Below are positions 20,052-46,905 of a DNA stretch of 64,000 nt, piece by piece. The DNA is from Macrostomum hystrix (Eukaryota; Animalia; Platyhelminthes), in contig CATNEN010000005.1 in assembly GCA_950097015.1 (NCBI GenBank), positions 558,001-622,000 of the forward strand. The letters run 5' to 3'. The notes below the pieces were generated by a model. It made no database searches and was not told the DNA's origin. It saw only the letters and a program-made list of their open reading frames with translations. Position numbers and translations under genes: made by a program. How positions within the stretch are numbered: the first letter of the stretch is position 1; the number at the start of each line of letters is the position of its first letter.

Positions 20052-20094
<43 letters not shown>

Positions 20095-27086: not shown

Positions 27087-30000
27087 CTACTGTTTCTGAA
27101 GTCTATCGCAGGCCCTCAGGGCAGTAGCAGCGGCGGCTCGACCAAATCCGGCAGTTGGCACGTCGCGCTCGTTCCAGATTTCAACGCCGTCGCAGGAGCA
27201 GATTCGTTTGTCGTTGGCGAATAGGCCAGCGGAGCGGGCCACAACTCCAGCAGCCAGGATGGCCCCGTCTGGACCGTCGGCTGAATGAGACTCGCTGATG
27301 CTCAGGCAGCGGCCGACGAGATTCCAAAGCTGAAGTCGCTTAGAAATCAAGCTGAAGCGAAGCCGACCGTTGGGACCGGCTTGGGAGCGGCCGATGCGGC
27401 CAGTGGGATCGGACTGGGAAGTGGGAAATTTTTTTCGAGGCCGTTATTGCGACTGGATAATAAACTGCTTCTCGGCATTTCTCTAACAAGGCAAGAAGAC
27501 GCATTGGAGGTTTTTTAAATGAGAGAGGGGCGGAATGGAGGATGAAGGGCGGAGTGAAGGGCGGAATGGAGGAGGATGGAGGAAAGAGGGGCGGAATGGA
27601 AGATGATGGAGGCGACAGGGGCGGAATGGAAGATGATGGAGGATAGAGGGGCGGAATAGAGGATGATGGAGGAAAGAGGGGCGGAATGGAGGATGATGGA
27701 GGAAAGAGGGGCGGAATGGAGGATGACGGAGGATAGAGGGGGAATGGAGGATGATGGAGGAAAGAAGCGCGGAATGGAGGATGATGGAGGAAGAGAAGAA
27801 CTCAGGATGATGCATCTGATGGCTAATGAGGATGAAAATAAATGCAAATTTAGATATTACACGTGTACCTCACGTAGTAGCTACAACAAGAAAATAAGTG
27901 TTGAAATGTACACTTTATGTTTAGATTCAGGGCCATTAAGTCAAACAATATGCAAGCAGACTTGAAGAAGTGACTTCAATGTCACAATTCTTGCCAGTTT
28001 ATTTTCGCGTCAATTAAGAGACTTCGCACCGGAAACTCAACTTATTCACTGGAAATACTCAGAAATGCTCAGACATGCAACGGCCAGTTGAAAGCCAAGG
28101 AAAGGGATGGATTTGAAGGCCAGGCAAAGGGATGGATTTGAAGGCCAAGGAAAGGGATGGATTTGAAGGCCAGGCAAAGGGATGGATTTGAAGGCCAAGG
28201 AAAGGGATGGATTTGAAGGCCAAGGAAAGGGATGGATTTGAAGGCCAAGGAAAGGGATGGATTTGAAGGCCAAGGAAAGGGATGGATTTAAAAGCCAAGG
28301 AAAGGGATGGATTTGAAGGCCAAGGAAATGGATGGATTTAAAAGCCAAGGAAAGGGATGGATTTGAAGGCCAAGGAAAGGGATGGATTTGAAGGCCAAGG
28401 AAAGGGATGGATTTAAAAGCCAAGGAAAGGGATAGATTTGAAGGCCAAAATAAGATGTGGATTTGAAGGCTAAGGAATGGGGTGGGTTTGAAGGTCAAGG
28501 AAATGGTTGGGCTTGAGGGCCAAAATAAGATGTGGATTTGAAGGTCAAAGAAATGGGTGGGCTTAAAGGCCATAGAAAGGGGTGGGTTTGAAGGTCAAGG
28601 AAAGGGGTGGGTTTGAAGGTCAAGGAAAGGGGTGGGCTTGAAGGTCAAGGAAAGGGGTGGGCTTGAAGGTCAAGGAAAGGGGTGTGTTTGAAGGCTGCAG
28701 AGCGACAACAAATAGCAGTTGAATATAAAAATCAATAGTCAGTTCAAATGGTTCCTGAAGTGTTAGGAAATATTCTATAGACACGGAAGCGGTGATTCAA
28801 TCGCAGATGACAGTGTAGCTTAGCCAGGGTGCCTAGAGCACCGTGCGGCCTTGGCCTACAGTAGAACACGCGAGCCACGCGTGAATGCAGCAAGGCCATA
28901 GCGCACATGTGGCAAGGCTCGTCTGTGACGTAGGCATGCAGCCCTGTGCAGAGATAGTCGCTACGACCGCCCAGGCGTTGAACGGCCCGCAGCGTCGAGT
29001 GCCAAGTAGGACAGTGTCGTCGTTCATCGGCGCATTCGACTAGAATAGCATCGGAGCGCGGATCCACAATTAGACAGGCCGACGAAGGTATTGGAGGAGT
29101 TGAAGCTAATGAAGCAGCTGGGACGCAAGTAGTTTTATTGGACGTGTCACAAGTAACGTTGTTTGAAACACCAGAAGTAACGGTACTAGAAGCGCCAGAA
29201 GAAACGTCATTAGAAACGACAGAAGTAACGGGATTACAGATGCCAGAAGTAACGATATTAGTAACGCCAGAAGTAACGTTACTACAGGCTTCAGAAGTAA
29301 CGGTATAACAGGCTTCAGAAGTAACGGTATTACAGGCTTCAGAAGTAACGGTATTACAGGCTTCAGAAATAACGGTATAAGAAACGTGAGACGCAACGGT
29401 ATTGGAGACATTGCTAGACGCAGTAGACACTGCAGAAGTAACTTCAGTGCAAGCGCTGAACAAGCTTGAAGTTGCAGCAGCAGCAAAATGTCCAAGAGAC
29501 AAAGCCCTTCGCATATGCCTCAAACAGGCAGCAGTTTCTGCTTCAGTGAAGCAATCTAAAGACAATTCCGCTTCTAAAGCTTTATCGGCGTGAAAGGAGC
29601 AGGGCCAGTGGGCCGAAGCCAGATCCCATTGTCGGCGGGTACGCGGTGAAACGCCAGGCACCCTAGTGATCTCTATCGCATCCAATTTGCCTAGCCAAGT
29701 AGAAGCAAACTCATTGGAAGCTTTCAATCGTGACAGTTCGCTAGCGTGACAAAGAAGTATTCGATAGGACCGGCCATGGTCAACTCGGAGGAGGTCAGCG
29801 GAGGCGACGGGAGCGGCGCGTTTCAAATGACGCAGATCCTGAGCGGGAAATTTTTCGCTCAAAAATTTTTGCAATCCGCTCAGGGGCCGAAGATCGCCGG
29901 TTAATAAGCCAGATGCGATGGGCACGAGGTGCGGATTTAGGCAGGTCGCCTCGTCAGGCAGTATGCTGGTTAGGCCATAGACTATTGTTGCGGCGATGCT

Positions 30001-33000
30001 GCCGCTCCGTGGCTGCTGCTGCTGCTGCTGTTATTGTTATTGTTCGTTGATTACTTATTATACTCGGAAAGTTTTATAATTCCTTCAGGAAATTTCTTAT
30101 ATCTGCTTATAGAGGGGAGAAAAGGGGCAGGAAGGAAATGGATTAAGAAGCTGATATCTTGGATTAATGGATGGCATGAGTAGATTATTGAAGGGAAGTG
30201 GTGCCCGTATAAAACGAAATGGTCACAAAAAAGGGCTGTGACCGTTCCACTTGTGACCGTGGTCCGTAACGCTGGTGACCGTTTAATGTGACCGTTCATG
30301 TTCATGAAGATAGGGTCACCAAGTTACCGTTCACTGTGACCATACTTTGTGACCGATTGCAGGGTCACCATGTGACCGTTCACTGTGACCATATTTTGTG
30401 ACCGTTATGTTCAGGGTCACCATGTGACCGTTCACTGTGACCATATTTTGTGTGACCATTCTGTGTGTCCGTTGTGTGACTGGCAGTAGCACCAGAAAAT
30501 AGTAACAAGAAAAAAATCTATACATCTGAATATACTTAATATTTATTATGAATTATATCAAATGTAAAATGCCATGACTTTCTTTATATTGATAAAAAGG
30601 CAGTAGTGGCAGTAGCAAAAATAGCCAGTAAAATATAGCTAGTAAAAAGTCGCTGTATTTGTATGGGCAAACTGCCCGCGCATCAAATGCCATAACTTTT
30701 TATATGTAAATATTGGTATCGATGGTTATAAGCAATTTTAGGAAACATATAAAGGTACAAGGTGTAATAAGTTACTGGCACTACCTGCTTTCCAGCCAGC
30801 TTTCACTGGACACTTTGCATCACTTGTCTTGCTATGTTCAGCAACTATTGTTGGCCGTGTCATGCTTCATCATTTTCTGCACACCAAAGGCTGCGGCTTC
30901 GTCGTCGTCGCCACTGTCGTCGTCCTCCTTGGCGTCAACGTCACCGCCGTCAAGGTCAAGTTCCTTGGCGCTGTCAAGGTCACCGCCGCCTTCTTCATCA
31001 CCGGCTTCCTTCCTTCCGCCCTTGTTCCTTCCAGTGCGACCGCTGGGTGTCACTTTGAGTGGTGACTTCAATTTTCGGGCAGCACAGAAGGCAGTGCGCT
31101 TGAAAATCGTGGCATAGGACTTCTTCGGAAATTCCTCAGGGAACTTTAGCCCACTTATAAAAGCCTTAATGGCGAACTTTTTCTTCTTAGATACTTCCGG
31201 CTTCGGCGGCGGACCATCCTTTTTTGTCTTGCGGCCGGTGTAGGAACGGGTCGTTAGCTCCTCGGTTGAGAAGACTGTTCGGTACAGGGTCCGGAGCATT
31301 TTATCGCCGTCTGTACTGCTGAAACCTCCCTTCACATAGACAGACACCGCACGCTTGATCTGTTCATAGTCGGCGGCCGACACAACGACGTCGGGGCAGC
31401 GCGCTGTCAAGGCCCTTGTCTCGGGTGCACGCTTCTGCTGCTTTGCTGACGCCAATTGGATCTGGGCGCGAAGTTCTCTATCGTCCAGCAACGGAACAGA
31501 CGCCGCGGCAGAGACGCCGCCAACAGATGCCGCGGCAGAAGCGCCGCCAGCAGTACTGCTGCCTAGCACGTCAGTACTGTCTTCAACCGTGACATCCATC
31601 CCACTGATGCCGGTAGAAATTGCGCGTTGTAGTACCTCAATGGCAGAAAACACGGCGTCCTGCAGCACCACGGTGTACTTAGCAACAGCACCGCCTTCTT
31701 CCGACCTCGAATGTTCGACCCCGCTCTGGGCATGCTCCAGCTCACACTGCAGCTCACGGATTCTGATGACGGCGGCTTCCCATTTTTCCTTATACGCAGT
31801 CTGCTCATATTCAGCATCGTCAAGCCGGTGGTTCAATTCTTCGATCTGCCGTCCCTGGCTTTCTCTGTAGCCGTCGGCAGTCTGCTGCGCTAACTCTGCT
31901 GCTGTCCGGAGGTTCAAAACCTCCTGCCGGAGCGCCTGGCAGGTGGTGCAGCTGTTAGGAAGGTTGATACCTGCCGGCCTCTGCACCGCTTGACAGGCAC
32001 TGGCACCAGCCTCTGCAGCCGCCTTTGTGCGGTATGGCCCTTTGCATACACGCACGCGGTAGGCCTTGCCTACGGTGAACGGTCACATGGTGACCCTGAA
32101 CATAACGGTCACAAAATACGGTCACAGTGAACGGTCACATGGTGACCCTGAACATAACGGTCACAAAGTACGGTCACAGTGAACGGTCACATGGTGACCC
32201 TGAACATAACGGTCACAAAATACGGTCACAATGAACGGTCACATGGTGACCCGGACAAATGGTCACATTTTATGGACACCAAGTGGTAACATGAGACCAT
32301 GGCGGTCACAAAACGTGGTCACTAACGGTAACATGTGACCATGACAGTCACAACAACGGTCACAGCCCCTTTTTTGTGACCATTCCGTTTTATACGGGGT
32401 GGATTAATGGACGGAACTAGTGTATTAATAGATGACACAAGTGTATTAATGGATGGAAGAGGCAGATTATTGAATGGAAGGGGCGGATTAATGGAGGTAA
32501 GTAGCGGATTAATGGAGGTAAGTAGCGGATTAATGGAGGTAAGTAGCGGATTAATGGAGGTAAGGAGAGGATTAAAGGAGGTAAGGAGCGGATAAATGGA
32601 GGTAAGGAGCGGATAAATGGAGGTAAGGAGCGGATTAAAGGAGGTAAGGAGCAGAATAATGGAGGTAAGGGGCGGATTAAGGGAGGTAAGGAGCAGAATA
32701 ATGGAGGGCAGGGCGGATTAAAGGAGGTAAGGGGGCGGATAGATGGAGGTAATGAGCAGATTAAGGGAGGGAAGGGCGGATTAAAGGAGGTGGGTAGCGG
32801 ATTAATTTAGGTAAAGAGCGGATAATTGGAGGGAAGGGGCGGATTTATGGATGGAAGGAGCGGATTAATCGAGGAACGGGCGGATTAATGGAGTCAAGGA
32901 GCGGACGTAGACTTACATACAAATGATTAGAAAAGTGAGTAGGCTATATATTATTACTAAAAAAGATCTAGCAAGGCTTAATACATACCTGACTATCGTG

Positions 33001-33638
33001 GGCATTTTGCCTATCTGATCTGTCGTCGTACAGGGGACCGCAGGATTCCAGACCACCCGACAGATCGCCGCCCTGACGCATTTCGACGCTGTACCAGCCG
33101 CCAGCTTCGAGACCGTCGACAGTACCGTCGAATAGGCACTGACTGTCGTCGGGTTGCAGTATTCTAACAACGCCTCTGATTGCTGCTGCCTGCGATTTCC
33201 GGTTCATACTACTGCTGCTACTGCTACTAGTAGTAGTGTGCTGAGAATCTAGCTGGGCTACACCTGCGGCGAAGTCTTGGCCGGACATGGCCGAACTTGC
33301 CGTGCCAACACCCTGCAGAACTGCCCGACAGCCAGTCGATTCCAGCAGTTCCAGGACCGAGTCGACGTGAAGCGAAGTTTTTAAAAGTACACGCTGCCGG
33401 CTCAGATCGATGCGAATGTCGGCCAACTGGCCGGCTGGCTGGTGGCTGGCTAAAACGCGACTGATGGCATCCGCACACGACTGACAGGTCATGTTGACTG
33501 CGAACTGCAGCTGCGCAAATGAGCGATGGATCGATGGTCAGACGGACAGGTACGTTGACAACACGCAGACAGTCAGACAGTAAATTAGACATCCAGGACA
33601 GACAGACAGACCGACATCCAGTACAGACAGACATCCAG

Positions 33639-33670
<32 letters not shown>

Positions 33671-33692
33671 TCCAGGACAGACAGACATCCAG

Positions 33693-33724
<32 letters not shown>

Positions 33725-34046
33725 TCTAGGACAGACAGACATCCAGGACAGACAGACATCCAGTACAGACAGATAGACAGACCGACAGGCAGAAAGACAG
33801 ACAGGCAGACAGGCAGGCAGACAGACAGACAGGCAGACAGACAGACAGGCAGACAGACAGACAGGCAGACAGACAGGCAGACAGACAGGCAGACAGACAG
33901 ACAGACAGGTAGACAGACATGCAAGTCAGATAAGCTAGTCAAATAATTTATCAAATCGAAATCAACTGAAAGGTAATAAAATTGCTCACCTCTTTCATAG
34001 CGGGCTCTAGTTCTGATAATGCCTGCTGTTCCAGTTTGTCGGCCAT
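27087..34046 (-). CDS. CCS: Copper chaperone for superoxide dismutase, 3 exons (34046-33990, 33510-32989, 27413-27087)
   Basis: LQFAVNMTCQSC (HMA MxCxxC); SOD-like domain GVVRILQ...FDGTVDGLE...GDLSGGLESCG; domain III VARSAGLFANDKRICSCDGVEIWNER (CxC). All junctions are phase-0 GT-AG. Confidence 0.93.
27525..27810. repeat. 30-bp purine-rich minisatellite in CCS intron 2
   Basis: GGGGCGGAATGGAGGATGATGGAGGAAAGA units. Confidence 0.85.
28090..28695. repeat. 25-bp minisatellite in CCS intron 2
   Basis: AAGGCCAAGGAAAGGGATGGATTTG units. Confidence 0.9.
28744..30027 (-). CDS. ADAT3: tRNA-specific adenosine-34 deaminase non-catalytic subunit, single exon nested in CCS intron 2
   Basis: DLRHLKR, HWPCSFH, HST (no catalytic Glu), YLCTGLHAYVTDEPCHMCAMALLHSRVARVFY, GALG...LH...LNHRF. 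The frame is open from TAACAG|30027 and has no ATG before the N-terminal domain. Confidence 0.92.
   Translation of the reverse strand, partial: QQQQQPRSGSIAATIVYGLTSILPDEATCLNPHLVPIASGLLTGDLRPLSGLQKFLSEKFPAQDLRHLKRAAPVASADLLRVDHGRSYRILLCHASELSRLKASNEFASTWLGKLDAIEITRVPGVSPRTRRQWDLASAHWPCSFHADKALEAELSLDCFTEAETAACLRHMRRALSLGHFAAAATSSLFSACTEVTSAVSTASSNVSNTVASHVSYTVISEACNTVTSEACNTVTSEACYTVTSEACSNVTSGVTNIVTSGICNPVTSVVSNDVSSGASSTVTSGVSNNVTCDTSNKTTCVPAASLASTPPIPSSACLIVDPRSDAILVECADERRHCPTWHSTLRAVQRLGGRSDYLCTGLHAYVTDEPCHMCAMALLHSRVARVFYCRPRPHGALGTLAKLHCHLRLNHRFRVYRIFPNTSGTI
30204..32398. mobile_element. 2195-bp CACTA/EnSpm(CMC)-type non-autonomous DNA transposon
   Basis: TIR CCCGTATAAAACG(A/G)AATGGTCACAAAAAAGGGCTGTGACCGTT at both ends; GTG duplicated at 30201-30203 and 32399-32401; inverted subterminal arrays of GTGACC motifs (52-bp unit). 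Confidence 0.88.
30838..32055 (-). CDS. Transposon-borne coiled-coil + BEN-like domain protein with acidic tail (5' end probably truncated)
   Basis: 405-aa open frame. DKMLRTLYRTVFSTEELTTRSYTGRKTKKDGPPPKPEVSKKKKFAIKAFI fits the BEN pattern (L..lF..eel...s.tG......kp.ld..k..aI). Heptad-rich segment; no DDE motifs; no ATG start. Confidence 0.7.
   Translation of the reverse strand: MRVCKGPYRTKAAAEAGASACQAVQRPAGINLPNSCTTCQALRQEVLNLRTAAELAQQTADGYRESQGRQIEELNHRLDDAEYEQTAYKEKWEAAVIRIRELQCELEHAQSGVEHSRSEEGGAVAKYTVVLQDAVFSAIEVLQRAISTGISGMDVTVEDSTDVLGSSTAGGASAAASVGGVSAAASVPLLDDRELRAQIQLASAKQQKRAPETRALTARCPDVVVSAADYEQIKRAVSVYVKGGFSSTDGDKMLRTLYRTVFSTEELTTRSYTGRKTKKDGPPPKPEVSKKKKFAIKAFISGLKFPEEFPKKSYATIFKRTAFCAARKLKSPLKVTPSGRTGRNKGGRKEAGDEEGGGDLDSAKELDLDGGDVDAKEDDDSGDDDEAAAFGVQKMMKHDTANNSC
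32470..32905. repeat. ~21-bp minisatellite (GCGGATTAATGGAGGTAAG..)
   Basis: Visible units; a degenerate version also lies left of the transposon (30110-30200). Confidence 0.85.
33575..33920. repeat. (CAGA)n-based microsatellite in CCS intron 1
   Basis: Visible. Confidence 0.9.
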
Positions 34047-34399
34047 GATTTGCAACTGAAAATTATTTTAACTGCTTTATTATTGTTCAACCTATTATTT
34101 TGGAATAACAGACAAAAACATAAATTACAGAAAAAAGTTATCAAGAATATCAATAATTTTTTTTAATACAAAAGACAACATCGTGAATTTTTATATTTGC
34201 ATCACAAGGCGAAAGAAATTTAAAATACTTGTATTGTAGTAAAGAAAATCTAAAGATGCAAAAACATCTGTCTTAAAAGTTTCGATCGCTAAAATTTGTA
34301 TAAATTACTAAATATACGAGTACTTTACGAGGACACGCTAAGATTCTATGTCACTAGAATAAGGGCCATAGAATTAAACATTAAAGTGAAGGAGGAGAG

Positions 34400-34676: not shown

Positions 34677-35693
34677 TTAGTGATAGAATCGCAAAGCGTT
34701 CAGGCCGCAATAGACGCGCCTTTTAAGATCATCCGGCAGCGACTCCAGGACAGATTTCAACACGCGTTCCGGATGATGCCTACGGCTGAAGTGGACGAAG
34801 AACAGTTGGCCGACTTTGTCGAATAGTCCAGGACGAGATGAAAAATCGTGCAGATGGCAGTGTCCGTATTTTTCTGCTAAATCTGTGAGGCCGTCAACGT
34901 AGGTCAATTCACAAATGAGCAGTTTGACTTTGAGCAGGTCGGGTACCGTCGGACAAGCCAAGACACTGAATCTGGTGTCTCCAGTATAGCCCAAAGTAGC
35001 CTCCCAGTGCGATTCTCGCAACTGCTGTCCATTGCGAGCTAATTCCGCCAACTCTGGCCCGGGTAAGTTAGCAAACTGTGGCAACAATTGACTACGCCTA
35101 CTGTACAGCAAGCAGCCAATGCTTGGCACTCGATGATCAGTAGCAAACGGTAAAATGCGCAAGTTTTTTGACAATTCGATGTCTTCGCCAGGCTTTGCTG
35201 GAAGAATTTTTCCGTAGAAAAAATCGGCCTTAACTTCAGCGTCTGGCTTTGCACTTTTTTTATTATTCGTTTTATTCTTGGATCCTGCGGTAGCCGATGA
35301 TTCTTCCTCGAGCTCGGCGTCGTTAGCGTCGTCGCCGTGAACAGTGCCAAATAAGCGTACGATATTGGAAAGTGGTTCAACTAGATGTTCTGGAACGTAA
35401 TAAACAGCGGGAGGCAGGCCAAACAGTTGACGCCGACGCATGTGCTGATGAATAGCTCCGCAGTGATCAACGTGACCGTGGCTGACAAAGACCACATCAG
35501 CGCTGATGGCCTGGTGCGGACAGGCGCCAATGTCTAAGGCCAGACGAAAGCCCTGGCCGTGTACAACGATGCAAGTCTCAAAGCCGGACACTGACCAATC
35601 GAAGACGCGCAGTTTGTCGCGCGGATTGTCAACAAAAAATTCGCTCCAAGACGGAGCGCCGGCATTGGCGGGCAAATCTTCAGCGTGCGACAT
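34677..35693 (-). CDS. Short-form TM-type tRNase Z (plant TRZ1-like metallo-beta-lactamase), paralog B, intronless
   Basis: WSVSGFETC, LDIGACP, SHGHVDH (HxHxDH), TDHRVPS, short flexible arm QLLPQFANLPGPEL, YTGDT, CELTYVD, YGHCH, HFSRRH; ATG at 35693. Confidence 0.88.
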   Translation of the reverse strand: MSHAEDLPANAGAPSWSEFFVDNPRDKLRVFDWSVSGFETCIVVHGQGFRLALDIGACPHQAISADVVFVSHGHVDHCGAIHQHMRRRQLFGLPPAVYYVPEHLVEPLSNIVRLFGTVHGDDANDAELEEESSATAGSKNKTNNKKSAKPDAEVKADFFYGKILPAKPGEDIELSKNLRILPFATDHRVPSIGCLLYSRRSQLLPQFANLPGPELAELARNGQQLRESHWEATLGYTGDTRFSVLACPTVPDLLKVKLLICELTYVDGLTDLAEKYGHCHLHDFSSRPGLFDKVGQLFFVHFSRRHHPERVLKSVLESLPDDLKRRVYCGLNALRFYH

Positions 35694-35824
35694 GCTTTCT
35701 TTGTTGTTACTGATTATCCCCTCTGTGTTAGCTGCAATTTTGTTTTGTCTGTTTAACGTCAACAAATAATGCTTGTCATTTACTTTAACTAGGCTTTTGA
35801 CTCTTTTACCAAAACTCTGCTACA

Positions 35825-37130: not shown

Positions 37131-37674
37131 CAATCTACAAGGATTTACATAGCAAAATAAGTAAAAATCTACTCAAAACAAATTACAAAGAACTAACAAA
37201 TATAGCAAGCGTGGTAGGATATCATTAAGCGACAATATCTCTTGAACGGATGTAACAAACTTAGAAAACTGACTTCTATTTATTTAGCTGTGAATATTAC
37301 ACAATGAGATGGCATCGTTAGAACGAGCACAAATCATAAAACAGTTACAATGCTCACATTCTTTACACGTTGCTTGATTTCTAAAAATACGAGCTATGAT
37401 CGCAGAGAGGCTAATTTATAATAAAGCAATCATGATAAGGAATAGCATAATTATGCACAAAATAATTAGGCTTGAAACAATGCTTGGGCGTTTAAAGCTG
37501 ACTATCAAACAGAAATAGATAAATAATGACACAAAGGACTCAAATGGTATAGAACGTGTAGAAGAAAATTATTCATTTTAAGCAAAACCTAACAGACTAT
37601 TATTTGGCTAAGTATTACAAAATGTTGTAATACAATATCGTATTGTATTTTTACTAAACCCCGGTGCTAAACGG

Positions 37675-38265
37675 AGTCAGTGATGGTAGCTTCAGGTTCT
37701 ACTAGTCAGTGACGGTAGCTTCAGGTTCTACAAGTCAGTGATGGTAGCTTCATGGTCTACTAGTCAGTGATGGTAGCTTCAGGGTCTACTAGTCAGTGAT
37801 GGTAGCTTCAGGGTCTACAAGTCAGTGATGGTAGCTTCAGGGTCTACTAGTCAGTGATGGTAGCTTCAGGGTCTACTAGTCAGTGATGGTAGCTTCAGGG
37901 TCTACTAGTCAGTGATGGTAGCTTCAGGGTCTACTAGTCAGTGATGGTAGCTTCAGGGTCTACTAGTCAGTGATGGTAGCTTCAGGGTCTACTAGTCAGT
38001 GATGGTAGCTTCAGGGTCTACTAGTCAGTGATGGTAGCTTCAGGTTCTACTAGTCAGTAATGGTAGCTTCAGGGTCTACAAGTCAGTGATGGTAGCTTCA
38101 GGGTCTACAAGTCAGTGATGGTAGCTTCAGGGTCTACTAGTCAGTGATGGTAGCTTCAGGGTCTACTAGTCAGTGATGGTAGCTTCAGGGTCTACTAGTC
38201 AGTGATGGTAGCTTCAGGGTCTACTAGTCAGTGACGGTAGCTTCAGGGTCTACTAGTCAGTGACG
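37675..38265. repeat. 29-bp minisatellite, ~20 copies, abutting the RCE1 stop
   Basis: TAGTCAGTGATGGTAGCTTCAGGGTCTAC. Confidence 0.95.
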
Positions 38266-38288
38266 AAACATGCTGACTTCTGTCTGAT

Positions 38289-39188
38289 CTACCAGAAGCA
38301 GTCGCATTGCGCCGAGAACATTCCTGGCTCAGTCAGAGGGCCCAGCAACAGCATCCAAGCAACTAAGCCGGCAACAAAAGTGCAGCCAAGTCCAATTAGT
38401 TTAAATCCGCGCAATTTTAATAAGGCCGGAAAGTCGGGAAATCCCATTAGATTGCAGAAGGAATGCGCGGCGCATACCGCAGCAAGATGTCCTGTGCGCA
38501 GGTACAGATAAGCTGAGTAAGCTCCGAATATATAAGTGTAAGAAAACTGCAGACTTGACTGTAGCAAGCTAGACATCAACGGGTAGCCTCGCTGAAGCCT
38601 ACTAATTAGATGATGAAAATGTGCCAATCCAAAGAATAGCGGCGAAATGAATGTAGCCTGTAGGCAGGTTAAATGTACGCATAGTACCGGCAGCATTAGG
38701 GCACGAAAGCACAATTCTTCCGTCACCGGAGCTAATAGAAGGGTCCGACAACAGCGCAGGCTAAGCAACGGCTCTCTATCAAAAAATCCATCGCCGGTCT
38801 CCCATGCTAGGAGAATTGGGCCCAGAAATAGAATGCCAGTTAGAAGCAGAGAAGCGCCAATAGCGTGCAACAGGCCAGACCAACGTAGGCCAATGAGCTG
38901 CAACACGTCCGGCCAGCTAGCAGCGGACGCTTTCATTAGAAAATAACGATAGCATAATAATACACTGAAGCTAACAGCCGATACACCAAGAAATCGACGC
39001 CTAATCACTGTTGGATTGTCGCGATCGACACCGTAGCTTGACGAATATTGTTTGACATTGGTTTTGCCAACACCGGCGCCCAGCTCCCATAGGTAGAGGC
39101 TGAGTACAAAGCCGGCAGCGATGAGTAAGGCGAACAGGCCGGCTACCCAGGCGGGCAGGGGCTGAAGAGGATCTGGGACTGGTAGGCA
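38289..39188 (-). CDS. RCE1: CAAX prenyl protease 2, single exon starting at a splice acceptor
   Basis: FVLSLYLW...DRDNPTVIRRRF, LLAPVTEELCFRA, FFGLAHFHH, QFSYTYIFGAYSAYLYLRTGHL, HSFCNLMGFP. The frame is open from TTTTCAG|39188 with no ATG before TM1. Confidence 0.94.
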   Translation of the reverse strand, partial: CLPVPDPLQPLPAWVAGLFALLIAAGFVLSLYLWELGAGVGKTNVKQYSSSYGVDRDNPTVIRRRFLGVSAVSFSVLLCYRYFLMKASAASWPDVLQLIGLRWSGLLHAIGASLLLTGILFLGPILLAWETGDGFFDREPLLSLRCCRTLLLAPVTEELCFRALMLPVLCVHLTCLQATFISPLFFGLAHFHHLISRLQRGYPLMSSLLQSSLQFSYTYIFGAYSAYLYLRTGHLAAVCAAHSFCNLMGFPDFPALLKLRGFKLIGLGCTFVAGLVAWMLLLGPLTEPGMFSAQCDCFW

Positions 39189-39425
39189 CTGAAAATAATA
39201 GGGAAAATAATTTGTTTGACGCGCCTGACGATGACAAAGTTGGGCAAAGTAATCCCTAAAGTAATCATGAGAAGAATGATCACAATTTAGCTTATAGCTA
39301 GGATAAGAGCTAGCATTTCTTACAAGAGAAGTCGGGAGTTAGAATATCAGTCTAAATGGAAACAATCAAAGTTATAAAAAAATGCACTGTTACTATAGAC
39401 GCAGTTTATCATTTAAGTATCACAA

Positions 39426-39844
39426 CCCTGTAAAAAATTCGGCTGCTTCTTCGGCGGGTTTTTGTGCAAAATAGGAGTGGAATCTACCCAAATCCCCCCT
39501 ATCTCGCAAGAGTTAAAGAAACCACCCAGGAAGCAGCCGATGTAACCGTAAATTGTGCGGAAACCGCCGAAGAATCACCCGAACCAGTGGCCCATGGGAC
39601 AACCAGAGAATTATTTACTGGCGATTCCTCGGCGGTTTCTGAGCATGGAATCTTCCGAACTGGAGGATTCTTTGGGTGATTCCATTTCGCCACCAAGAAG
39701 CACCGAGAAAACGCCCAGTTGGGTAGATTCTAAGCATGGAATCATCGGATTGGTATGTTTCCACCGTTCGGCTGTTTCTTTTTCTGGAAACACCGCAGAT
39801 TCCAACTGGAATCACCCAAAGAAACATCCCTATTTTTTAGCGGG
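39426..39844. mobile_element. 419-bp EnSpm/CACTA-like MITE
   Basis: AA|CCCTGTAAAAAAT ... ATTTTTTAGCGGG|AA; imperfect TIR, 2-bp TSD. Confidence 0.65.
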
Positions 39845-40534
39845 AATGGTAATAATGGTAATAATAAAGAATGATAATATGACCAGCAACTATGTTTCTT
39901 CAAAGATCAAATGAAACAATTGTTTTCATTATATTTTAAATCAATTCTATGAAATTCAATTCGTATAAATCAATGATAGAAATCTATAGTTGTTATATAT
40001 ACGAGTATATATTGTACGCATACAATATAACACTCAAGCTACGGAGTAGGTGCACGAACGATAACATTAACAAAAAATAATTAGAAGCAAAACAAAAGTC
40101 TAGAGGCACATCAAGCAGTTTTTTGACACATGGCATCTCTAAAACAAAATGTTAAGAATATATACGAGAAATAATATATATATATATATAATAATAATAT
40201 ATATATGTATTGACCAACGACATTGTCAGCAAGCCTGGAATTAAAACAAAAAATGCAATCCACATTTAAAACGATTCTTTTAGTTTTTTACTGACACGCT
40301 TATTGTTTGATATTTTATAAGTAAAGTTCAAATGGACTACTATTAAGTAGTTGTAAGTAGCAAGTTTAGCATCCCACATACTAAACTAGCGACGCAGAGG
40401 GATCTCTCAAACATCTCTTAAACGGGTAAATATTTTCTAAAGTCTGCTGTCATTGTATCTAATTCTGTCGATATAAAACCAACTCCCTGGGGCAAATATC
40501 TCCCCTAGTTTGAAAAGTGACTAAGACAACCTCT

Positions 40535-42238
40535 TTAAGAGTACAAAAGCTGCTTAGCAGTCAAGGCACAATAGACTCGTCGACTAAGCTGAGTAGGCAG
40601 GCCAGAATAAACTCGCTGCCTTATTTCTTTCGGTGAATAACGATTGCTGAAGTGCACAAATACTAACTGATTTATCGATCCAAATAGTTTCCAATGCTTA
40701 GCAAATTGGTCTAGATGACAGTGCCCATATTTGTCAGCCCGTTCGATTGCACCATCTAGAAATGTTAGCTCGGAGATGAGCAGGCGAACTTTTAATAAAT
40801 CTGGCACATCGCCTGACATAAACACGTCGAATTTCGTGTCTCCTGTGTAGGCTAGCAACGGCTCCGATTTGGGCTCACCGTGAATAGGTAGGCCTTGAGC
40901 CTCACGAGTGTGCAATTCTAGCCGACTAAGATTGCGACACTCTGGCAATAGGTTAAAACTTTTTCGACGCAGAATACAGCCCAGACTAGGGACGCGATGC
41001 TCTGTGCCAAATATTTCCAGTGTTAAATCAGACAGATTGTCGCCGATTGGGAAACTATCGCCTGACTGTACGCCGATGATTTTGTTAGGAGCTGAAATAG
41101 CAGCCGAATAATCTTCGTCATCTTGCATGCGCGCAAATATTTCCAGAGTGGCTTTGATTGGTTCAACTAAGCATTCTGGCATGTAGTAAGTAGCTGGCGG
41201 CAGACGCAACAGCTGACGCTTTCTAATGTGCATATGCAAAGCGCCGCAGTGATCCACGTGACCGTGACTGATGAATACAACATCAGAGTCGACGGCCTGA
41301 GGTGGACAGGCGCCAAGGTCTAATACAAGATGAAATCCACAACCGTGTACAACTATGCAAGTTTCATTACCAGAAATGGACCAATCGAATAGCGAGAATT
41401 CGTCGAAACGATGCCACAATCTTTCGGAGTTGGGATAGCGTGCAATAACTGCCGATTTTTTTTGCTCTTGGGTCTCCTGATGGGACCCCTGTTGCTGTTG
41501 GATTTCCTGATTCCATGACTGTTGTTGATTTTGGACATCCTGATTGAAAGAATGTTGCTGCTGGGTACCCTGATGCCACGCCTGTTGCTGCTGGGTACCC
41601 TGATGCCACACCTGTTGCTTCTGGGTACCCTGATGCCACGCCTGTTGCTGCTGGGTACCCTGATGCCACGCCTGTTGCTGCTGGGTACCCTGATGCCACG
41701 CCTGTTGCTGCTGGGTACCCTGATGCCACGCCTGCTGCTGCTGGGTACCCTGATGCCACGCCTGCTGCTGCTGGGTACCCTGATGCCACGCCTGCTGCTG
41801 CTGGGTACCCTGATGCCACGCCTGTTGCTGCTGGGTACCCTGATGCCACGCCTGCTGCTGCTGGATACCCTGATGCCACACCTGTTGCTGCTGGGTACCC
41901 TGATGCCACGCCTGTTGCTGTCGATTGCGTCTTTGATGACGCTTTTGTTGTTGCTGAGCTAGTTCGTCTGGTTGCCACTGTTGGTTCTTGGGCACTCTGT
42001 ACTGTGCATGATGCTGAATTTGAGCTGACTCCGGCTTGTACTGTTGCTGCTCGTGTGTCCCATTTATTTTATTACGGTCCCGTGGCGGAGTAGGATGACT
42101 CAATTGAGGCTGATTGCGCTCTGGATGGGTTGGCGCGCTGTTGCTAAGCACTTCTTTGTGCGTATTTATTGTGATATCAACTAGAGTAGAAAGTGCCTCT
42201 GGCGCGTCGAGAGGCACGTTGCCTTCAGCTGATTGTTC
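40535..42238 (-). CDS. TM-type tRNase Z paralog A with N-terminal Q-rich (QQQQAWHQGT)n extension
   Basis: FDWSISGNETC, LDLGACP, SHGHVDH, TEHRVPS, YTGDT, SELTFLD, YGHCH, HFSNRY. The frame is open from CTTCCAG|42238 with an in-frame TGA just upstream; the first ATG lies after the HxHxDH motif. Confidence 0.88.
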   Translation of the reverse strand, partial: EQSAEGNVPLDAPEALSTLVDITINTHKEVLSNSAPTHPERNQPQLSHPTPPRDRNKINGTHEQQQYKPESAQIQHHAQYRVPKNQQWQPDELAQQQQKRHQRRNRQQQAWHQGTQQQQVWHQGIQQQQAWHQGTQQQQAWHQGTQQQQAWHQGTQQQQAWHQGTQQQQAWHQGTQQQQAWHQGTQQQQAWHQGTQQQQAWHQGTQKQQVWHQGTQQQQAWHQGTQQQHSFNQDVQNQQQSWNQEIQQQQGSHQETQEQKKSAVIARYPNSERLWHRFDEFSLFDWSISGNETCIVVHGCGFHLVLDLGACPPQAVDSDVVFISHGHVDHCGALHMHIRKRQLLRLPPATYYMPECLVEPIKATLEIFARMQDDEDYSAAISAPNKIIGVQSGDSFPIGDNLSDLTLEIFGTEHRVPSLGCILRRKSFNLLPECRNLSRLELHTREAQGLPIHGEPKSEPLLAYTGDTKFDVFMSGDVPDLLKVRLLISELTFLDGAIERADKYGHCHLDQFAKHWKLFGSINQLVFVHFSNRYSPKEIRQRVYSGLPTQLSRRVYCALTAKQLLYS

Positions 42239-42299
42239 CTGGAAGAAGCAACGAAATATTTTTTTAATTCATAAAAAAAAGCTTGGGATTTTAATCTTG

Positions 42300-42520: not shown

Positions 42521-42850
42521 AGCCTCTGTATGTTCCACGCAATAGCTTTGACACTGTCTGTAAATCTCGTCTGTTGGAGCTAAAATCTCCCACAACGGCT
42601 ACGAATTTCAGAAAAAAATTGACAGTAAAGTGATCAGATCACAATGGAATGTATTAAAAAAATGCCCAAATACACGGTTGAACATTTATTTTATGGAAAC
42701 ATAATGACCAAACGATAACAATAACAAAAACCCTGCACTTGAAACTAATTTTCAAACTTACTTACTAGAAGTAGAAAACATGCGAATTAGGACTATATTT
42801 TATGCTAATTAATCTACATAATATATATACTCGTAGTAATTGAAGTTATA

Positions 42851-43129
42851 TTATTTTCCTTGACCCACCGCGCCAGTAAGCACAGCCTGATGCTCTTGAA
42901 AGCGCATAGAGATACGCTGTGTAGTGTTCATGTACTTGGCTACACAATTAGCCACACAATTCTTCTCTGTATCGGTAACCGAGCGGCGATCAAATTTATT
43001 GACGCAATCGGTGAAGCAGCGCTGATGCGATCTGTTGAATGAGGTGAAAATTTCGCGTATCTGAGCCCGATTCAGTTCCTGCTCCATTAGAGAGATGGCG
43101 CCTGATGATTGTAACGGACTTGTCGACAT
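42851..43129 (-). CDS. TIMM9: Mitochondrial intermembrane-space small Tim chaperone Tim9
   Basis: Twin CX3C (CFTDC, CVANC) and KYMNTTQRISMRFQEH. Confidence 0.93.
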   Translation of the reverse strand: MSTSPLQSSGAISLMEQELNRAQIREIFTSFNRSHQRCFTDCVNKFDRRSVTDTEKNCVANCVAKYMNTTQRISMRFQEHQAVLTGAVGQGK

Positions 43130-43254
43130 TATCGCCTTTTTGTTTGTTGCTGTTGATGTTTATCTAGCTGCGAATTTCAAAAGAAAGGATTTGTTACACT
43201 GAGACACTGAAAAGCTAGATTTTGAAGTTCCAAACAGGCAATGTACTTTACCAG

Positions 43255-44456: not shown

Positions 44457-46905
44457 TCAAATCCAAACAACTTGACAGCCAGCCGCCATCAAGCCATCGA
44501 GTCCGTCTACATAAGCATCTCTGGCTTCAATATCAAAGTCAGCTTGAAAGTAGCCATCGCCACCTTCGTAGGCTTGACCATCGCCACTGCCATCGGACCA
44601 ATCGTCCGCCTGAAAACCAATTGGCCAGCTTAGCAATAAAATTTGCAACCTGCCAATAGCTAGCTCTTTCAAAGTTGGCACAACCTGATTGGCCCAATCT
44701 CCAGTAGCCAATGGCCAATCGCTGATGTCTAAACGTTGTAAATTAGAACAGCCGTTGGGTTTTAAAACGGCTAGCAATAGATTAGTAAAGGCGTTGCGAC
44801 TATCAATCTGATCATGGTCGTTAACTTCGCCATAGGCTCTGGTCAACGCGGCGAGACGCAGACCAATTAGATGCGGCAGATTAAACAGTTTTGCTACAAA
44901 AGTTTGTTGGAATACATTGTGTTGTTCTAGATAATCCAGGGGTCGGCTAACTAACTAGCTAACGGGCCAAAGAGAGACACGAGAGAGATGAGACTCGGGG
45001 GAGATAAGATACGGCCAAGAGATGAGACACTGGAGAGATGAAACACGGGTGGGAGAGATGAGACACGGGTGGGAGAGATGAGACACGGGGAAGATGAGAC
45101 ACAGGAGAGATAAGACTCGGGAGAGATAAGATACGGCCAAGAGATGAGACACTGGAGAGATGAGACACGGGAACGATGAGACACGGGAGAGATTAGACTC
45201 GGGAGAGATGAGACATGGGAGAGATGAGACTCGGGAGAGATAAGATACGGGAGAGATGAGACACGGGAACGATGAGACACGGGAGAGATGAGACACGGTT
45301 GGGAGATATGAGACACGGGAGAGATTAGACTCGAGAGAGATGAGACATGGGAGAGATGAGACCGAGGAGAGATAAGATACGGGAGAGATGAGACTCGGGA
45401 GAGATGAGATACGGCCAAGAGGATACAATCTTAAATTTGTTCAAGCTACAAACCCACCATAGACAGACAATTCTGCATTCTCAGTAGAGCCAGATTCTTG
45501 AGTAGATAATCCAACAATCAATAGAGGATTATCAGACAAATCCAAGTGCTGCAGAGTATTGCGACATGCAGACAGACTGGCTAGTAAATTAGGCGAGTTA
45601 GCGCGCAGACGACACCCGGACAATCGTAGAGCTGTTAAACGGCTAAAACAAGCCGAATTAGCAAGTGAAGTTGGCAATTCTAGGCCAGGATTACCACTTA
45701 GATTCAAATGCAGCAGATTGCATTCGTGACTACGTGGAAGTGACTTTGCAGCGCTAGATAAGCCAAGCAAGTGTTTCATTGAAGTCTTAGACTTACGACC
45801 TAACCGACTGCGACTAAGGTCTAGGCAATCAACGCCAGATAAGAGACGATCATAAAGTTGACTAGCATTTTCCAATGACAGACTGTCAGTGCTCAGGTCA
45901 GTATCGGTTAGACACACGCTGATTGGATGGTTCTGTTTCTGGTAAAAATTTTTTTACAAAAGGAGTTCATAGAAAACAGGCACTATTTGATTATTTAGTA
46001 ATTAATATACATCATCTGATCATATAGTTAATAAAGCTTAAAAGTCATTGCTTTTTGCTTTCTTTTAGGATGTGGTTACCAGACTTAAATTTCGCATTCA
46101 ATATCAATTCGATTTCTGATAGCACAACTTTATCATGAAAGAGAAGTACCAACACGTACATCCTAATAGTAAACAAAACATTTCAAAGGCCTACCTCTTC
46201 GGTTTGAGCTAATCTATTGTTGTCATTCCAATAATTGACAAGCAAATCGTCCAAAGCTGCCATAAGTGCGGCCGGATGCACAGAAGCCAGGTTTAAACTA
46301 TACAAACGGAGCTGACCACCGCACTGGCGCATCAATGTTGTCAGGCGCGATAATTCTGCTGGTCCATCAATTTTAACGTCTAGTTCAATGACAACATTTT
46401 GCTTTTTAGTACTACTACTAAAATTAGTATTATGACTATCTAATATCTGTGCTAACTGATCTAAAAAAGCAAACTGCTGCTGTTGGTTTGGTGCCAGACC
46501 AGCTAGCTGATAAGTTATTGGCTGAGAGTCACTGTTCATACGGCATCTCTGTAGTATGGCCTGCCCAATCAATGGCCATATTTTGCTAGAATCAGCTAGT
46601 TGATCAACTGGTATTGAGAATGCCTTAAATGGCCACACAGCGACTAGATGAAGCAGACTCAGACTGTGACCATTTGATATGGCGCTGCTAAGCAATTGTG
46701 GCCAAATACTGCGCGGTGGTCTGAATGGTAGGCAGAAATTTCTAAGAAAATTTGAATCCTCAGTCAAGACAGCGGATGCTAAGCAGCGCAGACTGGCTAA
46801 TTCTGGACTGTCAACAATCATTTTGGCTGAATCATAGCTGACACAATTATCAGCCTCTGGCCAGCCGACCCAAGCTGAACAAGTGCCACAATTAAAAGTG
46901 CAAGA
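44457..46905 (-). CDS. LRRC14/PRAME-like leucine-rich repeat protein, 3 exons (46905-46195, 45938-45458, ~44950-44457)
   Basis: N-terminal SLRCLASAVL...SIWPQLLSSA...LLHLVAVWPF (BC-box/cullin-box-like PRAME pattern); LRRs LDLSRSRL, LNLSGNPGL, LRLSGCRL, LDLSDNPL, LDISDWPL. The exon 2/3 boundary is less certain. Confidence 0.72.
44960..45425. repeat. 16-bp satellite (GAGAGATGAGACACGG) in LRR-gene intron 2
   Basis: Reverse complement of the GABBR1 intron 4 unit. Confidence 0.9.

What the first reader, a model, noticed from the sequence alone, without database searches (positions are those of the whole stretch)
27087..46905. Candidate seven-gene trans-spliced operon coupling tRNA maturation with mitochondrial IMS and CAAX functions
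Seen: LRRC14-like > TIMM9 > tRNase Z A > RCE1 > tRNase Z B > CCS (with nested ADAT3) are all on the minus strand. Each is preceded by a YAG acceptor (46906, 43168, 42239, 39189, 35732, 34056, 30028). Spacers are 0.6-2.6 kb and in several cases largely minisatellite, MITE or SINE. Three of seven genes are tRNA-processing enzymes (2 tRNase Z, ADAT3) and two are Cys-motif IMS proteins (Tim9, CCS). Inference: one polycistronic unit resolved by SL trans-splicing, with intercistronic regions expanded by repeats and a promoter upstream of ~47000.
Basis: inference. Interest (0 to 1): 0.75.

Follow-up and report, generated by a model that had tools for sequence, protein, structure and literature searches.

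The report
Trans-spliced gene cluster in Macrostomum flatworm
Seven housekeeping genes lie head to tail on one strand of a Macrostomum flatworm genome and receive (three shown, two more inferred) a spliced leader, so they are probably one or two operons of a kind already described in this genus, not a new functional coupling.

Summary
On the minus strand of 27,087-46,906 lie, in order, an LRR gene, Tim9, an RNase-Z-like gene (Z-A), Rce1, a second RNase-Z-like gene (Z-B), and CCS with ADAT3 nested in its last intron. The genome is a Macrostomum species other than M. lignano.

- **RNA evidence:** They then run on for 20-25 non-genomic letters. A near-identical run shows ...TTTTTTGCAT(G), the flatworm leader tail.
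- **Start codons:** LRR, Z-A, Rce1 and ADAT3 lack a usable start codon of their own and are in frame with the leader's AUG, in both species.
- **M. lignano:** it keeps the same gene order. Its published annotation names Tim9/Z-A/Rce1 and Z-B/CCS as genes cut from shared transcriptional units.
- **Spacers:** after subtracting repeats they are 395-887 nt, under the published 1-kb operon criterion (PMC8629364).

This is a Macrostomum-type spliced-leader operon cluster, a known kind.

Not shown: one promoter, a precursor spanning all seven genes, or leader use at 46906, 35732, 34056 and 30028. The proposed functional coupling is unsupported.

The parts
44457..46906 (-). LRR-repeat gene. Exons are 46905-46195, 45938-45458 and 44893-44457. 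The acceptor CAG ends at 46906. The first in-frame genomic AUG is 30 codons in, and the leader AUG is in frame and open.
   Evidence: Pfam LRR_1. Exon model read. The ortholog in L002 (549 aa, 41-56% identity) begins without an ATG, 9 nt after an AG. No RNA was laid here.
42652..43168 (-). Tim9/Tim10-family gene (CDS 43129-42851) with its own AUG. The leader AUG opens a 13-codon uORF whose stop overlaps the AUG (TAATG). AATAAA lies at 42690-42685.
   Evidence: Pfam zf-Tim10_DDP 2.9e-17. X4 and X5 contigs cover 42652/42708-43168 with no mismatches and carry 20 loose letters beyond 43168. The X1 loose end reads TCTTTTTTGCAT(G) in mRNA sense. Sequence.
40403..42239 (-). RNase-Z-like MBL gene A (CDS 42238-40535 plus the leader AUG). 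It has no genomic AUG before the HxHxDH motif. A Q-rich 30-bp coding repeat lies at 41553-41920.
   Evidence: Pfam Lactamase_B_2 1.5e-08. NCBIfam RNase_Z 7.7e-15, below cut-off. Contigs end at 42239 with 23 loose letters in X4 and X5. Frame. The M. lignano ortholog is 'partial', with the same GAA-first exon.
38264..39189 (-). Rce1 CAAX prenyl protease gene (CDS 39188-38289 plus the leader AUG). The N-terminal transmembrane helix is encoded upstream of any genomic AUG.
   Evidence: Pfam Rce1-like 2.4e-17. One ungapped contig covers 38264-39189 with no mismatches and has 24-25 loose letters beyond 39189 in X4 and X5. It is 79% identical to M. lignano Rce1, which has the same acceptor and frame.
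34677..35732 (-). RNase-Z-like MBL gene B (CDS 35693-34677) with its own AUG. The predicted acceptor is at 35732, and the leader AUG would give a 6-codon uORF.
   Evidence: PDB 7xgt RNase ZS1 1.4e-37. 69% identical to M. lignano BOX15_Mlig003964g5. Acceptor context TTGCAG. No RNA was laid here.
27087..34056 (-). CCS (copper chaperone for SOD1). Exons are 34055-33990, 33510-32989 and 27413-27087, all junctions in phase 0. The predicted acceptor is at 34056. The last intron (5.6 kb) holds a transposon and ADAT3.
   Evidence: tblastn of M. lignano CCS P0079 against the window. Splice sites read. Pfam HMA and Sod_Cu are weak. UniRef names the ortholog 'Superoxide dismutase copper chaperone'.
28744..30028 (-). 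ADAT3 gene nested on the same strand in the last CCS intron. It has no in-frame genomic AUG for about 170 codons. The leader AUG is in frame at 30028 or at any of the following CAG repeats. An in-frame TAA lies just upstream.
   Evidence: PDB mouse ADAT3 7nz7_B 4e-33. Frame. The same nesting, acceptor type and frame occur in M. lignano L001 13425-14546. No RNA was laid here.
30204..32398 (-). DNA transposon with inverted ends and a 405-aa coiled-coil ORF, inserted between CCS exon 2 and the ADAT3 acceptor. It is absent from the M. lignano locus.
   Evidence: Inverted self-match of 30204-30464 with 32398-32100. No tblastn hit of its ORF in L001 or L002.
35816..38263 (.). Two minisatellites (32-bp unit at 35816-37129, 29-bp unit at 37675-38263). 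Together they fill 74% of the Rce1 to Z-B spacer.
   Evidence: TRF. Spacer arithmetic. M. lignano has two other minisatellites in the same spacer.
39426..39845 (.). High-copy dispersed repeat inside the Z-A to Rce1 spacer.
   Evidence: Summed contig word-depth in the bins over 39433-39933 is 149-1355 in X4 and X5, against 16-20 over the genes, with many different loose flanks at both ends.
39985..40416 (.). Transcribed stretch downstream of the Z-A stop codon. It is either a long 3' UTR or read-through towards Rce1.
   Evidence: Contigs at 39985-40163 and 40218-40416 have no mismatches and depth 3-12, against 16-17 for the gene. No AATAAA is visible there.

Best explanation
This is a conserved block of spliced-leader (SL) trans-spliced housekeeping genes in a Macrostomum flatworm. 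It is organised as one or a few Macrostomum-type operons. RNA polymerase II reads through several genes. Each downstream mRNA is cut free by 3' cleavage and polyadenylation of the gene ahead and by addition of the SL at a CAG acceptor. For LRR, RNase-Z-like A, Rce1 and ADAT3, the SL's terminal AUG also supplies the start codon. The spacers have been inflated by minisatellites, a SINE piece, a dispersed repeat and a transposon. At the least, Tim9>Z-A>Rce1 and Z-B>CCS/ADAT3 behave as multi-gene units. Whether all seven genes hang on one promoter is open. ADAT3 sits in the last CCS intron, so one primary transcript can probably yield either CCS mRNA (by splicing over ADAT3) or ADAT3 mRNA (by SL addition plus polyadenylation). 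Shown: gene content, three SL-type acceptors, missing start codons, synteny, spacer make-up. Inferred: polycistronic transcription, the number of promoters, and the either/or processing at CCS/ADAT3.
For: - **Contig ends:** in runs X4 and X5 (no mismatches, same strain) contigs end exactly at 43168, 42239 and 39189. They carry 20-25 letters that lie nowhere in the 5-kb stretch. That is the length expected when a k=31 assembly runs into a sequence shared by thousands of mRNAs (my inference). No joint to an upstream exon was reported.
- **Leader tail:** the X1 loose end at 43168 reads ...TTTTTTGCAT plus the shared G. It ends like the M. lignano SL...ATTTATTGCATG (PMC8629364).
- **Missing start codons:** the SL-AUG frame is open and matches the conserved protein in LRR, Z-A, Rce1 and ADAT3. 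Z-A has no genomic AUG before its HxHxDH motif. Rce1 has none before about residue 85, and ADAT3 none before about residue 170. M. lignano has the same acceptors and frames.
- **'Partial' orthologs:** the M. lignano Z-A and Rce1 proteins are deposited as 'partial'.
- **Synteny:** M. lignano has the same order and strand for all seven genes on the two scaffolds read here. The consecutive accessions of a third scaffold (355 kb) give the same order for Tim9 to CCS.
- **Shared unit names:** Tim9, Z-A and Rce1 share the prefix Mlig025095 (g2, g3, g4). Tim9 and Z-A share Mlig021034. Z-B and CCS share Mlig003964. Prefixes stand for assembled transcriptional units that were then cut at SL and poly(A) signals (PMC5730564).
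- **Spacers:** repeat-adjusted stop-to-acceptor spacers are 395-887 nt, all below the 1-kb threshold. The paper that set this threshold also reports that repeats inflate operon spacers (PMC8629364).
- **Tight pair in M. lignano:** Z-B stop to CCS AUG is only 232 nt.
- **Intergenic RNA:** contigs cover 39985-40416.
Against: - No contig bridges a complete spacer. The 42272-42438 bin (Tim9 to Z-A) and 39190-39425 (just upstream of the Rce1 acceptor) have no unique coverage. Contigs drop rare precursors, so this is weak evidence.
- The letters of the X4 and X5 loose ends at the three acceptors were not printed. Their identity with one another is therefore inferred from length and position, not read.
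- SL use at 46906, 35732, 34056 and 30028 was not tested with RNA.
- About 60% of SL-trans-spliced M. lignano genes are not in operons (PMC8629364), so SL use alone does not make an operon.
- The M. lignano unit names break between Rce1 and Z-B, at the longest spacer.
- Collinearity with M. lignano continues past the cluster into the ASC channel gene. Kept order may therefore reflect limited divergence rather than operon constraint.
- Reading shared prefixes as shared transcripts rests on the naming rule in PMC5730564, not on the transcripts themselves.
Confidence: 0.72

Rival explanations
1. One reading: one polycistronic unit of about 20 kb, transcribed from a single promoter upstream of about 47 kb, is resolved by SL trans-splicing into all seven mRNAs.
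For: All seven genes lie on one strand, with no opposite-strand gene between them. Every repeat-adjusted spacer is under 1 kb, which meets the published computational criterion (PMC8629364). The first gene (LRR) also needs the SL AUG. About 7 kb upstream holds no recognisable gene. Operons of up to nine genes are reported in M. lignano (PMC8629364).
Against: There is no RNA evidence across the spacers. The M. lignano unit prefixes fall into at least two or three groups, with a break at the Rce1 to Z-B spacer. PMC8629364 notes that such units tend to split in repeats, so this break is weak evidence. Only 7% of M. lignano operons have more than three genes (PMC8629364). Contig word-depth for Tim9 is 2.5-3 times that of Z-A and Rce1, which is a poor measure.
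Confidence: 0.3
2. Seven independently transcribed genes, each with its own promoter and a short outron. They are merely neighbours in a collinear region, and SL trans-splicing serves only to trim 5' ends and donate AUGs.
For: Most SL-trans-spliced M. lignano genes are monocistronic (PMC8629364). Raw spacers of 0.6-2.6 kb leave room for promoters. The stretches just upstream of the Rce1 and Z-A acceptors show no unique contig coverage. Synteny extends beyond the cluster.
Against: The M. lignano annotation cut Tim9, Z-A and Rce1, and also Z-B and CCS, from shared assembled units (PMC5730564). The Z-B to CCS spacing of 232 nt in M. lignano leaves little room for a promoter plus a 3' UTR. ADAT3 lies inside a CCS intron on the same strand. 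No conserved non-coding block that could be a promoter was found in any spacer.
Confidence: 0.2
3. The grouping is functional: a regulon selected to co-express tRNA maturation enzymes (two RNase Z, ADAT3) with intermembrane-space Cys-motif proteins (Tim9, CCS) and CAAX processing (Rce1).
For: The gene identities are as stated. The order is kept in a second species.
Against: The two RNase-Z-like genes are paralogs (44-46% identity), so they count once. That leaves two tRNA-related families among six. No known pathway links these functions. Published M. lignano operons are enriched only for conserved genes (PMC8629364). Synteny is not specific to the cluster.
Confidence: 0.05

Closest known systems
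Macrostomum lignano SL operons and 'transcriptional units' (Wudarski et al. 2017, PMC5730564; Ustyantsev & Berezikov 2021, PMC8629364)
   Same: Same-strand SL-trans-spliced genes. A CAG acceptor with a T-rich lead, and a single SL ending in AUG. Spacers are inflated by simple repeats and transposons but fall under 1 kb once these are subtracted. The orthologous M. lignano genes already carry shared unit prefixes.
   Different: A different Macrostomum species (orthologs 41-90% identical). Six or seven genes would be far above the usual two or three. One cistron (ADAT3) is nested in an intron of another. Polycistronic RNA was not seen directly here.
Caenorhabditis elegans operons (Blumenthal & Gleason 2003, as cited in PMC8629364)
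   Same: Polycistronic pre-mRNA is resolved by 3' end formation plus SL trans-splicing. The genes are mostly housekeeping and functionally unrelated.
   Different: C. elegans uses a specialised SL2 and spacers of about 100 nt. Here the raw spacers are 0.6-2.6 kb, and M. lignano is reported to have one SL. No second leader was looked for here.
Operons and chimeric gene models of parasitic flatworms (Calvelo et al. 2025, PMC12582326)
   Same: The SL ends in AUG. Acceptors can serve both cis- and trans-splicing. Chimeric gene models arise across operon genes. M. lignano UniRef models P0078, P0082 and P0083 fuse Z-B, CCS, ADAT3 and even the ASC channel.
   Different: Those operons were called at 300 bp or less. 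The chimeric models here may be predictor artefacts and are not evidence of RNA.
Flatworm SL 3'-terminal AUG as initiator methionine (Cheng et al. 2006, J Biol Chem 281:733, cited in PMC12582326)
   Same: Four genes here have no usable AUG of their own and are in frame with the SL AUG.
   Different: Translation from the SL AUG was not tested here. It is inferred from conserved coding sequence upstream of any genomic AUG.

Membership tests
SL trans-spliced operon, Macrostomum type (criteria of PMC8629364) | Adjacent genes on one strand, not interrupted by an opposite-strand gene | tested here: met
   ORF, Pfam and tblastn maps. Plus-strand ORFs inside the cluster lie in repeats. The RT fragment on the plus strand (25603-26686) lies outside the cluster.
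SL trans-spliced operon, Macrostomum type (criteria of PMC8629364) | Downstream genes receive the spliced leader at their 5' acceptor | tested here: inconclusive
   Met for Tim9, Z-A and Rce1: contigs end at the acceptor with 20-25 non-genomic letters, and one printed tail is ...TTTTTTGCAT(G). Inferred for LRR and ADAT3 from the missing AUG and the open SL-AUG frame in two species. Not tested for Z-B and CCS.
SL trans-spliced operon, Macrostomum type (criteria of PMC8629364) | Repeat-adjusted intergenic distance below 1 kb | tested here: met
   The five between-gene spacers are 782, 552, 887, 653 and 395 nt from stop codon to acceptor, 3' UTRs still included. The ADAT3 stop to CCS exon 3 interval is 456 nt. 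The CCS exon 2 to ADAT3 distance is about 260 nt once the transposon (30204-32398) and the array 32399-32905 are removed.
SL trans-spliced operon, Macrostomum type (criteria of PMC8629364) | A precursor RNA that spans two or more cistrons | tested here: inconclusive
   There are low-depth contigs at 39985-40416 but none across a whole spacer, and depth is zero at 42272-42438. Indirect support: shared transcriptional-unit prefixes in M. lignano (naming rule in PMC5730564).
SL trans-spliced operon, Macrostomum type (criteria of PMC8629364) | One promoter, with no internal transcription starts | not testable with these tools
   Needs CAGE or TSS-seq, cap-type-specific libraries or chromatin marks. 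Only assembled contigs were available.
C. elegans-type operon | Spacers of about 100 nt and a dedicated downstream leader (SL2) | tested here: not met
   Raw spacers are 611-2556 nt. M. lignano is reported to have a single SL (PMC8629364). A second leader was not looked for here.
Short-form tRNase Z (for the two MBL genes) | MBL fold with HxHxDH and family-level similarity to RNase Z | tested here: inconclusive
   HGHVDHCG is present in both. The best PDB match is rice RNase ZS1, 1.4e-37. NCBIfam RNase_Z scores of 38-55 bits are far below the 293-bit cut-off. Activity was not tested.

The most novel reading that the evidence does not exclude
A single conserved pre-mRNA of about 20 kb carries seven cistrons. 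This would be near the upper size limit known for any animal operon. One cistron (ADAT3) is excised from the last intron of another (CCS) by SL trans-splicing. Each primary transcript would then have to choose between making CCS or ADAT3, and the same acceptor could also give an in-frame CCS-ADAT3 fusion by cis-splicing.
Probability: 0.2. Interest if true: 0.5.

Novelty: new member of a known kind. Interest (0 to 1): 0.3.

Why it matters
If confirmed, this would be an unusually long (six or seven gene) example of the repeat-inflated SL operons already described in Macrostomum lignano, kept in a second species. It gives a clean set of genes (Z-A, Rce1, ADAT3, LRR) whose translation must start at the leader's AUG. 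It also gives a same-strand gene nested in an intron, where trans-splicing and cis-splicing compete. These features are useful for annotating Macrostomum genomes, because gene finders fuse these genes or call them 'partial'. They are also useful for designing transgenes. They do not change what is known about operons, and the proposed functional link between tRNA processing, intermembrane-space proteins and CAAX processing has no support.

Tried and rejected
- **Rfam and tRNA scans:** the Rfam gathering scan and ARAGORN on the whole window found nothing. No snoRNA or SL RNA gene was detected in the spacers.
- **M. lignano SL in the window:** a search with up to 3 mismatches gave no match.
- **Exact-protein look-ups:** Tim9 and Z-B in public assemblies, to fetch transcript contigs with their 5' tails, were not on record.
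- **LRR identity:** PDB sequence searches and the ESM Atlas gave only generic LRR or sub-threshold hits. The 'LRRC14-like' label is neither confirmed nor refuted.
- **Conserved non-coding blocks:** blastn of every spacer against the two M. lignano loci found only a SINE-like repeat at non-orthologous places. No promoter-like block turned up.
- **M. lignano gene ids:** searches in two papers' supplements and in the paper library found nothing.
- **Chimeric UniRef models:** P0078, P0082 and P0083 fuse Z-B, CCS, ADAT3 and the ASC channel. I considered them as evidence for polycistronic RNA and rejected them as probable gene-predictor merges.
- **Bacterial promoter/terminator scan:** not used, because it does not apply to a eukaryote.
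- The acceptors at 46906, 35732, 34056 and 30028 stay untested, and the X4 and X5 tails at the three tested acceptors were among 35 rows not printed.

Full report
**What is there**

The window is eukaryotic and rich in minisatellites. On the minus strand between 46,906 and 27,087 lie seven genes, in this order:
- **LRR gene:** three exons, Pfam LRR_1.
- **Tim9/Tim10-family gene:** zf-Tim10_DDP, E 2.9e-17.
- **Z-A:** an MBL-fold RNase-Z-like gene with a Q-rich coding repeat.
- **Rce1:** Rce1-like, E 2.4e-17.
- **Z-B:** a second RNase-Z-like gene.
- **CCS:** weak HMA and Sod_Cu hits.
- **ADAT3:** a deaminase-domain gene.

Z-B is closest to rice RNase ZS1 among solved structures (7xgt, 1.4e-37). 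The deaminase gene is closest to mouse ADAT3 (7nz7_B, 4e-33). NCBIfam RNase_Z hits are well below cut-off, so I call the two genes RNase-Z-like. The label 'LRRC14-like' could not be confirmed.

Laying the M. lignano CCS protein on the window shows that CCS has three exons: 34055-33990, 33510-32989 and 27413-27087. ADAT3 (30027-28744) and a transposon with inverted ends (30204-32398) sit inside its last intron, on the same strand.

**Whose genome**

The best relatives of Z-B, CCS and ADAT3 are Macrostomum lignano proteins at 50-69% identity. Across the seven genes, tblastn identities to the M. lignano loci run from 41% (LRR exon 1) to 90% (Tim9). Exact look-ups of two window proteins found nothing. 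The window therefore comes from a Macrostomum species other than the sequenced M. lignano DV1.

**The acceptors**

Five of them fit the published M. lignano trans-splice motif [T/C]TNCAG (PMC8629364). By itself this means little, because YAG occurs 36 times per kb and the motif 3.5 times per kb on this strand.

RNA settles three of the sites. I laid contigs of four public runs on 38264-43248. Runs X4 and X5 match the window without a mismatch and behave as transcriptomes:
- **Tim9:** their contigs cover 42652/42708-43168.
- **Z-A:** their contigs cover 40403/40451-41582 and 41891-42239.
- **Rce1:** their contigs cover 38264-39189, ungapped.

In both runs each gene's contig stops exactly at 43168, 42239 or 39189. 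It then continues for 20, 23 and 24-25 letters that lie nowhere in the stretch, and no joint to an upstream exon was reported. That length is what a k=31 assembly should keep of a sequence shared by thousands of mRNAs (my inference). The alignment always reaches the G of the AG, as expected if the added sequence ends in G.

The letters of these tails were among rows not printed. In run X1, which is nearly identical to the window, the tail at 43168 reads, in mRNA sense, TCTTTTTTGCAT followed by the shared G. It therefore ends TTGCATG, like the M. lignano leader (PMC8629364).

**Start codons**

Adding ATG to each exon gives an open frame that continues into the conserved protein for LRR, Z-A, Rce1 and ADAT3. 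For CCS it gives a frame that adds four residues ahead of CCS's own AUG.
- **Z-A** has no genomic AUG before its HxHxDH motif.
- **Rce1** encodes its first membrane helix and the conserved RRF stretch upstream of any genomic AUG.
- **ADAT3** has no in-frame AUG for about 170 codons, and an in-frame TAA lies just before its acceptor.
- **Tim9 and Z-B** have their own AUGs. There the leader AUG opens uORFs of 13 and 6 codons.

M. lignano has the same acceptor position and frame for LRR, Z-A, Rce1 and ADAT3. Its Z-A and Rce1 proteins are deposited as 'partial'. Use of the leader's terminal AUG as initiator is known in flatworms (Cheng et al. 2006, cited in PMC12582326). This makes leader addition obligatory for four genes, two of which were not covered by RNA here.

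**Related loci**

Two M. lignano scaffolds fetched around the orthologs carry the same genes in the same order and orientation, including ADAT3 nested in the last CCS intron. Consecutive protein accessions show the same order on a third scaffold.

The deposited names are informative:
- Tim9, Z-A and Rce1 on one scaffold are Mlig025095g2, g3 and g4.
- Tim9 and Z-A elsewhere are Mlig021034g2/g3 and g4/g5.
- Z-B and CCS are Mlig003964g1/g2 and g5/g6.

According to the genome paper, prefixes denote assembled 'transcriptional units', often precursor mRNAs. These units were then cut into genes at leader and poly(A) signals (PMC5730564). Read this way, the published annotation already treats Tim9-Z-A-Rce1 and Z-B-CCS as multi-gene units. 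This is an inference from a naming rule, not from the transcripts. In M. lignano the Z-B stop and the CCS AUG are only 232 nt apart, with poly(A) signals and a TTTCAG acceptor between them.

**Spacers**

Stop-to-acceptor distances are as follows.

| Spacer | Raw (nt) | After subtracting repeats (nt) |
|---|---|---|
| LRR to Tim9 | 1288 | 782 |
| Tim9 to Z-A | 611 | 552 |
| Z-A to Rce1 | 1345 | 887 |
| Rce1 to Z-B | 2556 | 653 |
| Z-B to CCS | 620 | 395 |

- The subtracted repeats are the tandem arrays, the dispersed repeat at 39426-39845 and the window's own dispersed matches. The 3' UTRs are still included.
- The SINE-like piece at 42299-42428 was not subtracted. Taking it out too would shorten the Tim9 to Z-A spacer further.
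- All values are below the 1-kb repeat-adjusted threshold used to call M. lignano operons. The same paper reports that repeats inflate operon spacers and that operons reach nine genes.
- The M. lignano spacers hold minisatellites at the same places but with other units.

**What is not shown**

- No contig crosses a whole spacer. The 42272-42438 bin has no depth, and 39190-39425 has no unique coverage. Only 39985-40416, downstream of Z-A, is covered at low depth, and that may be a long 3' UTR.
- Leader use at 46906, 35732, 34056 and 30028 was not tested with RNA.
- Nothing here locates a promoter.
- The M. lignano prefixes split between Rce1 and Z-B, although such units are said to break in repeats (PMC8629364).
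- Collinearity with M. lignano continues downstream into an ASC-type channel gene. Kept order is therefore not specific to the cluster.
- About 60% of leader-receiving M. lignano genes are not in operons (PMC8629364).

**Verdict**

This is very probably a Macrostomum-type spliced-leader operon cluster, with at least Tim9-Z-A-Rce1 and Z-B-CCS/ADAT3 as units. Whether it is one seven-gene unit with a promoter beyond 47 kb is open; I put that at about 0.3.

The suggested functional coupling is not supported. The two RNase-Z-like genes are paralogs, and nothing links the remaining functions. The kind of system, including repeat-inflated spacers, is published for M. lignano, and the orthologous genes there already carry shared unit names. 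The novelty is therefore that of a new, unusually long member of a known kind. The nested, leader-dependent ADAT3 inside CCS is the most unusual feature, and another note of this scan also flagged it.

Noticed in passing
window 33597-33919, 32445-32905, 28088-28695 and 35816-38263; L001 11365-11916, 12488-13282, 14635-15143 and 7864-9821: Minisatellites sit at the same relative places in both Macrostomum species: CCS intron 1, after CCS exon 2, after ADAT3, and the Rce1 to Z-B spacer. The CCS intron 1 array is (TGTC)n in both. The others have different or only loosely similar units, as if the arrays persist while their units turn over.
   Followed up: partly
window 43129-43168: On the Tim9 mRNA the leader's AUG opens a 13-codon uORF. 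Its stop overlaps the Tim9 start codon (TAATG), an arrangement that could couple termination to re-initiation.
   Followed up: no
window 32989 / 30028 / 27413; M. lignano proteins P0082, P0083, P0078: The CCS exon 2 donor, the ADAT3 acceptor and the CCS exon 3 acceptor are all in phase 0, so cis-splicing of CCS exon 2 to ADAT3 would be in frame. UniRef models of M. lignano use exactly this junction (…DDAQ|RLHGN…). They also fuse Z-B, CCS, ADAT3 and the ASC channel, which is probably a gene-predictor merge.
   Followed up: partly
window 41553-41920: A 30-bp tandem repeat (12 copies, 96% alike) encodes a Q-rich (QQQQAWHQGT)n extension ahead of the catalytic domain of Z-A. The M. lignano ortholog lacks it. 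RNA contigs break at it, but no joint removes it, so it appears to be coding.
   Followed up: partly
window 29151-29403; L001 13946-14164: ADAT3 carries a coding 24/48/72-bp tandem repeat between its N-terminal part and the deaminase domain. M. lignano ADAT3 has a tandem repeat at the corresponding place.
   Followed up: no
window 39426-39845: A dispersed repeat of about 420 bp with very high RNA-contig depth (about 150-1350, against about 16 for neighbouring genes) and many different flanks. It looks like a highly expressed or very abundant SINE- or MITE-like element.
   Followed up: no
window 42299-42428; L001 6613-6744: A tRNA-like SINE fragment in the Tim9 to Z-A spacer matches, at 73% identity and in the opposite orientation, a stretch in the M. 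lignano Z-A to Rce1 spacer. ARAGORN calls no tRNA there.
   Followed up: partly
window 30204-32398: A transposon with roughly 260-300-bp inverted ends made of GTGACC-rich 52-bp repeats and a 405-aa coiled-coil ORF on the minus strand. It is inserted in the CCS intron just upstream of the ADAT3 acceptor and is absent from both M. lignano loci.
   Followed up: partly
window 19971-23418 (-), 25603-26686 (+), 57814-59151 (+): Flanking genes. An ASC/DEG-ENaC channel gene lies 3.7 kb downstream on the same strand and is syntenic in M. lignano. A non-LTR reverse-transcriptase fragment lies on the opposite strand between it and CCS. Ribosomal protein L18 lies on the plus strand about 11 kb upstream.
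   Followed up: partly
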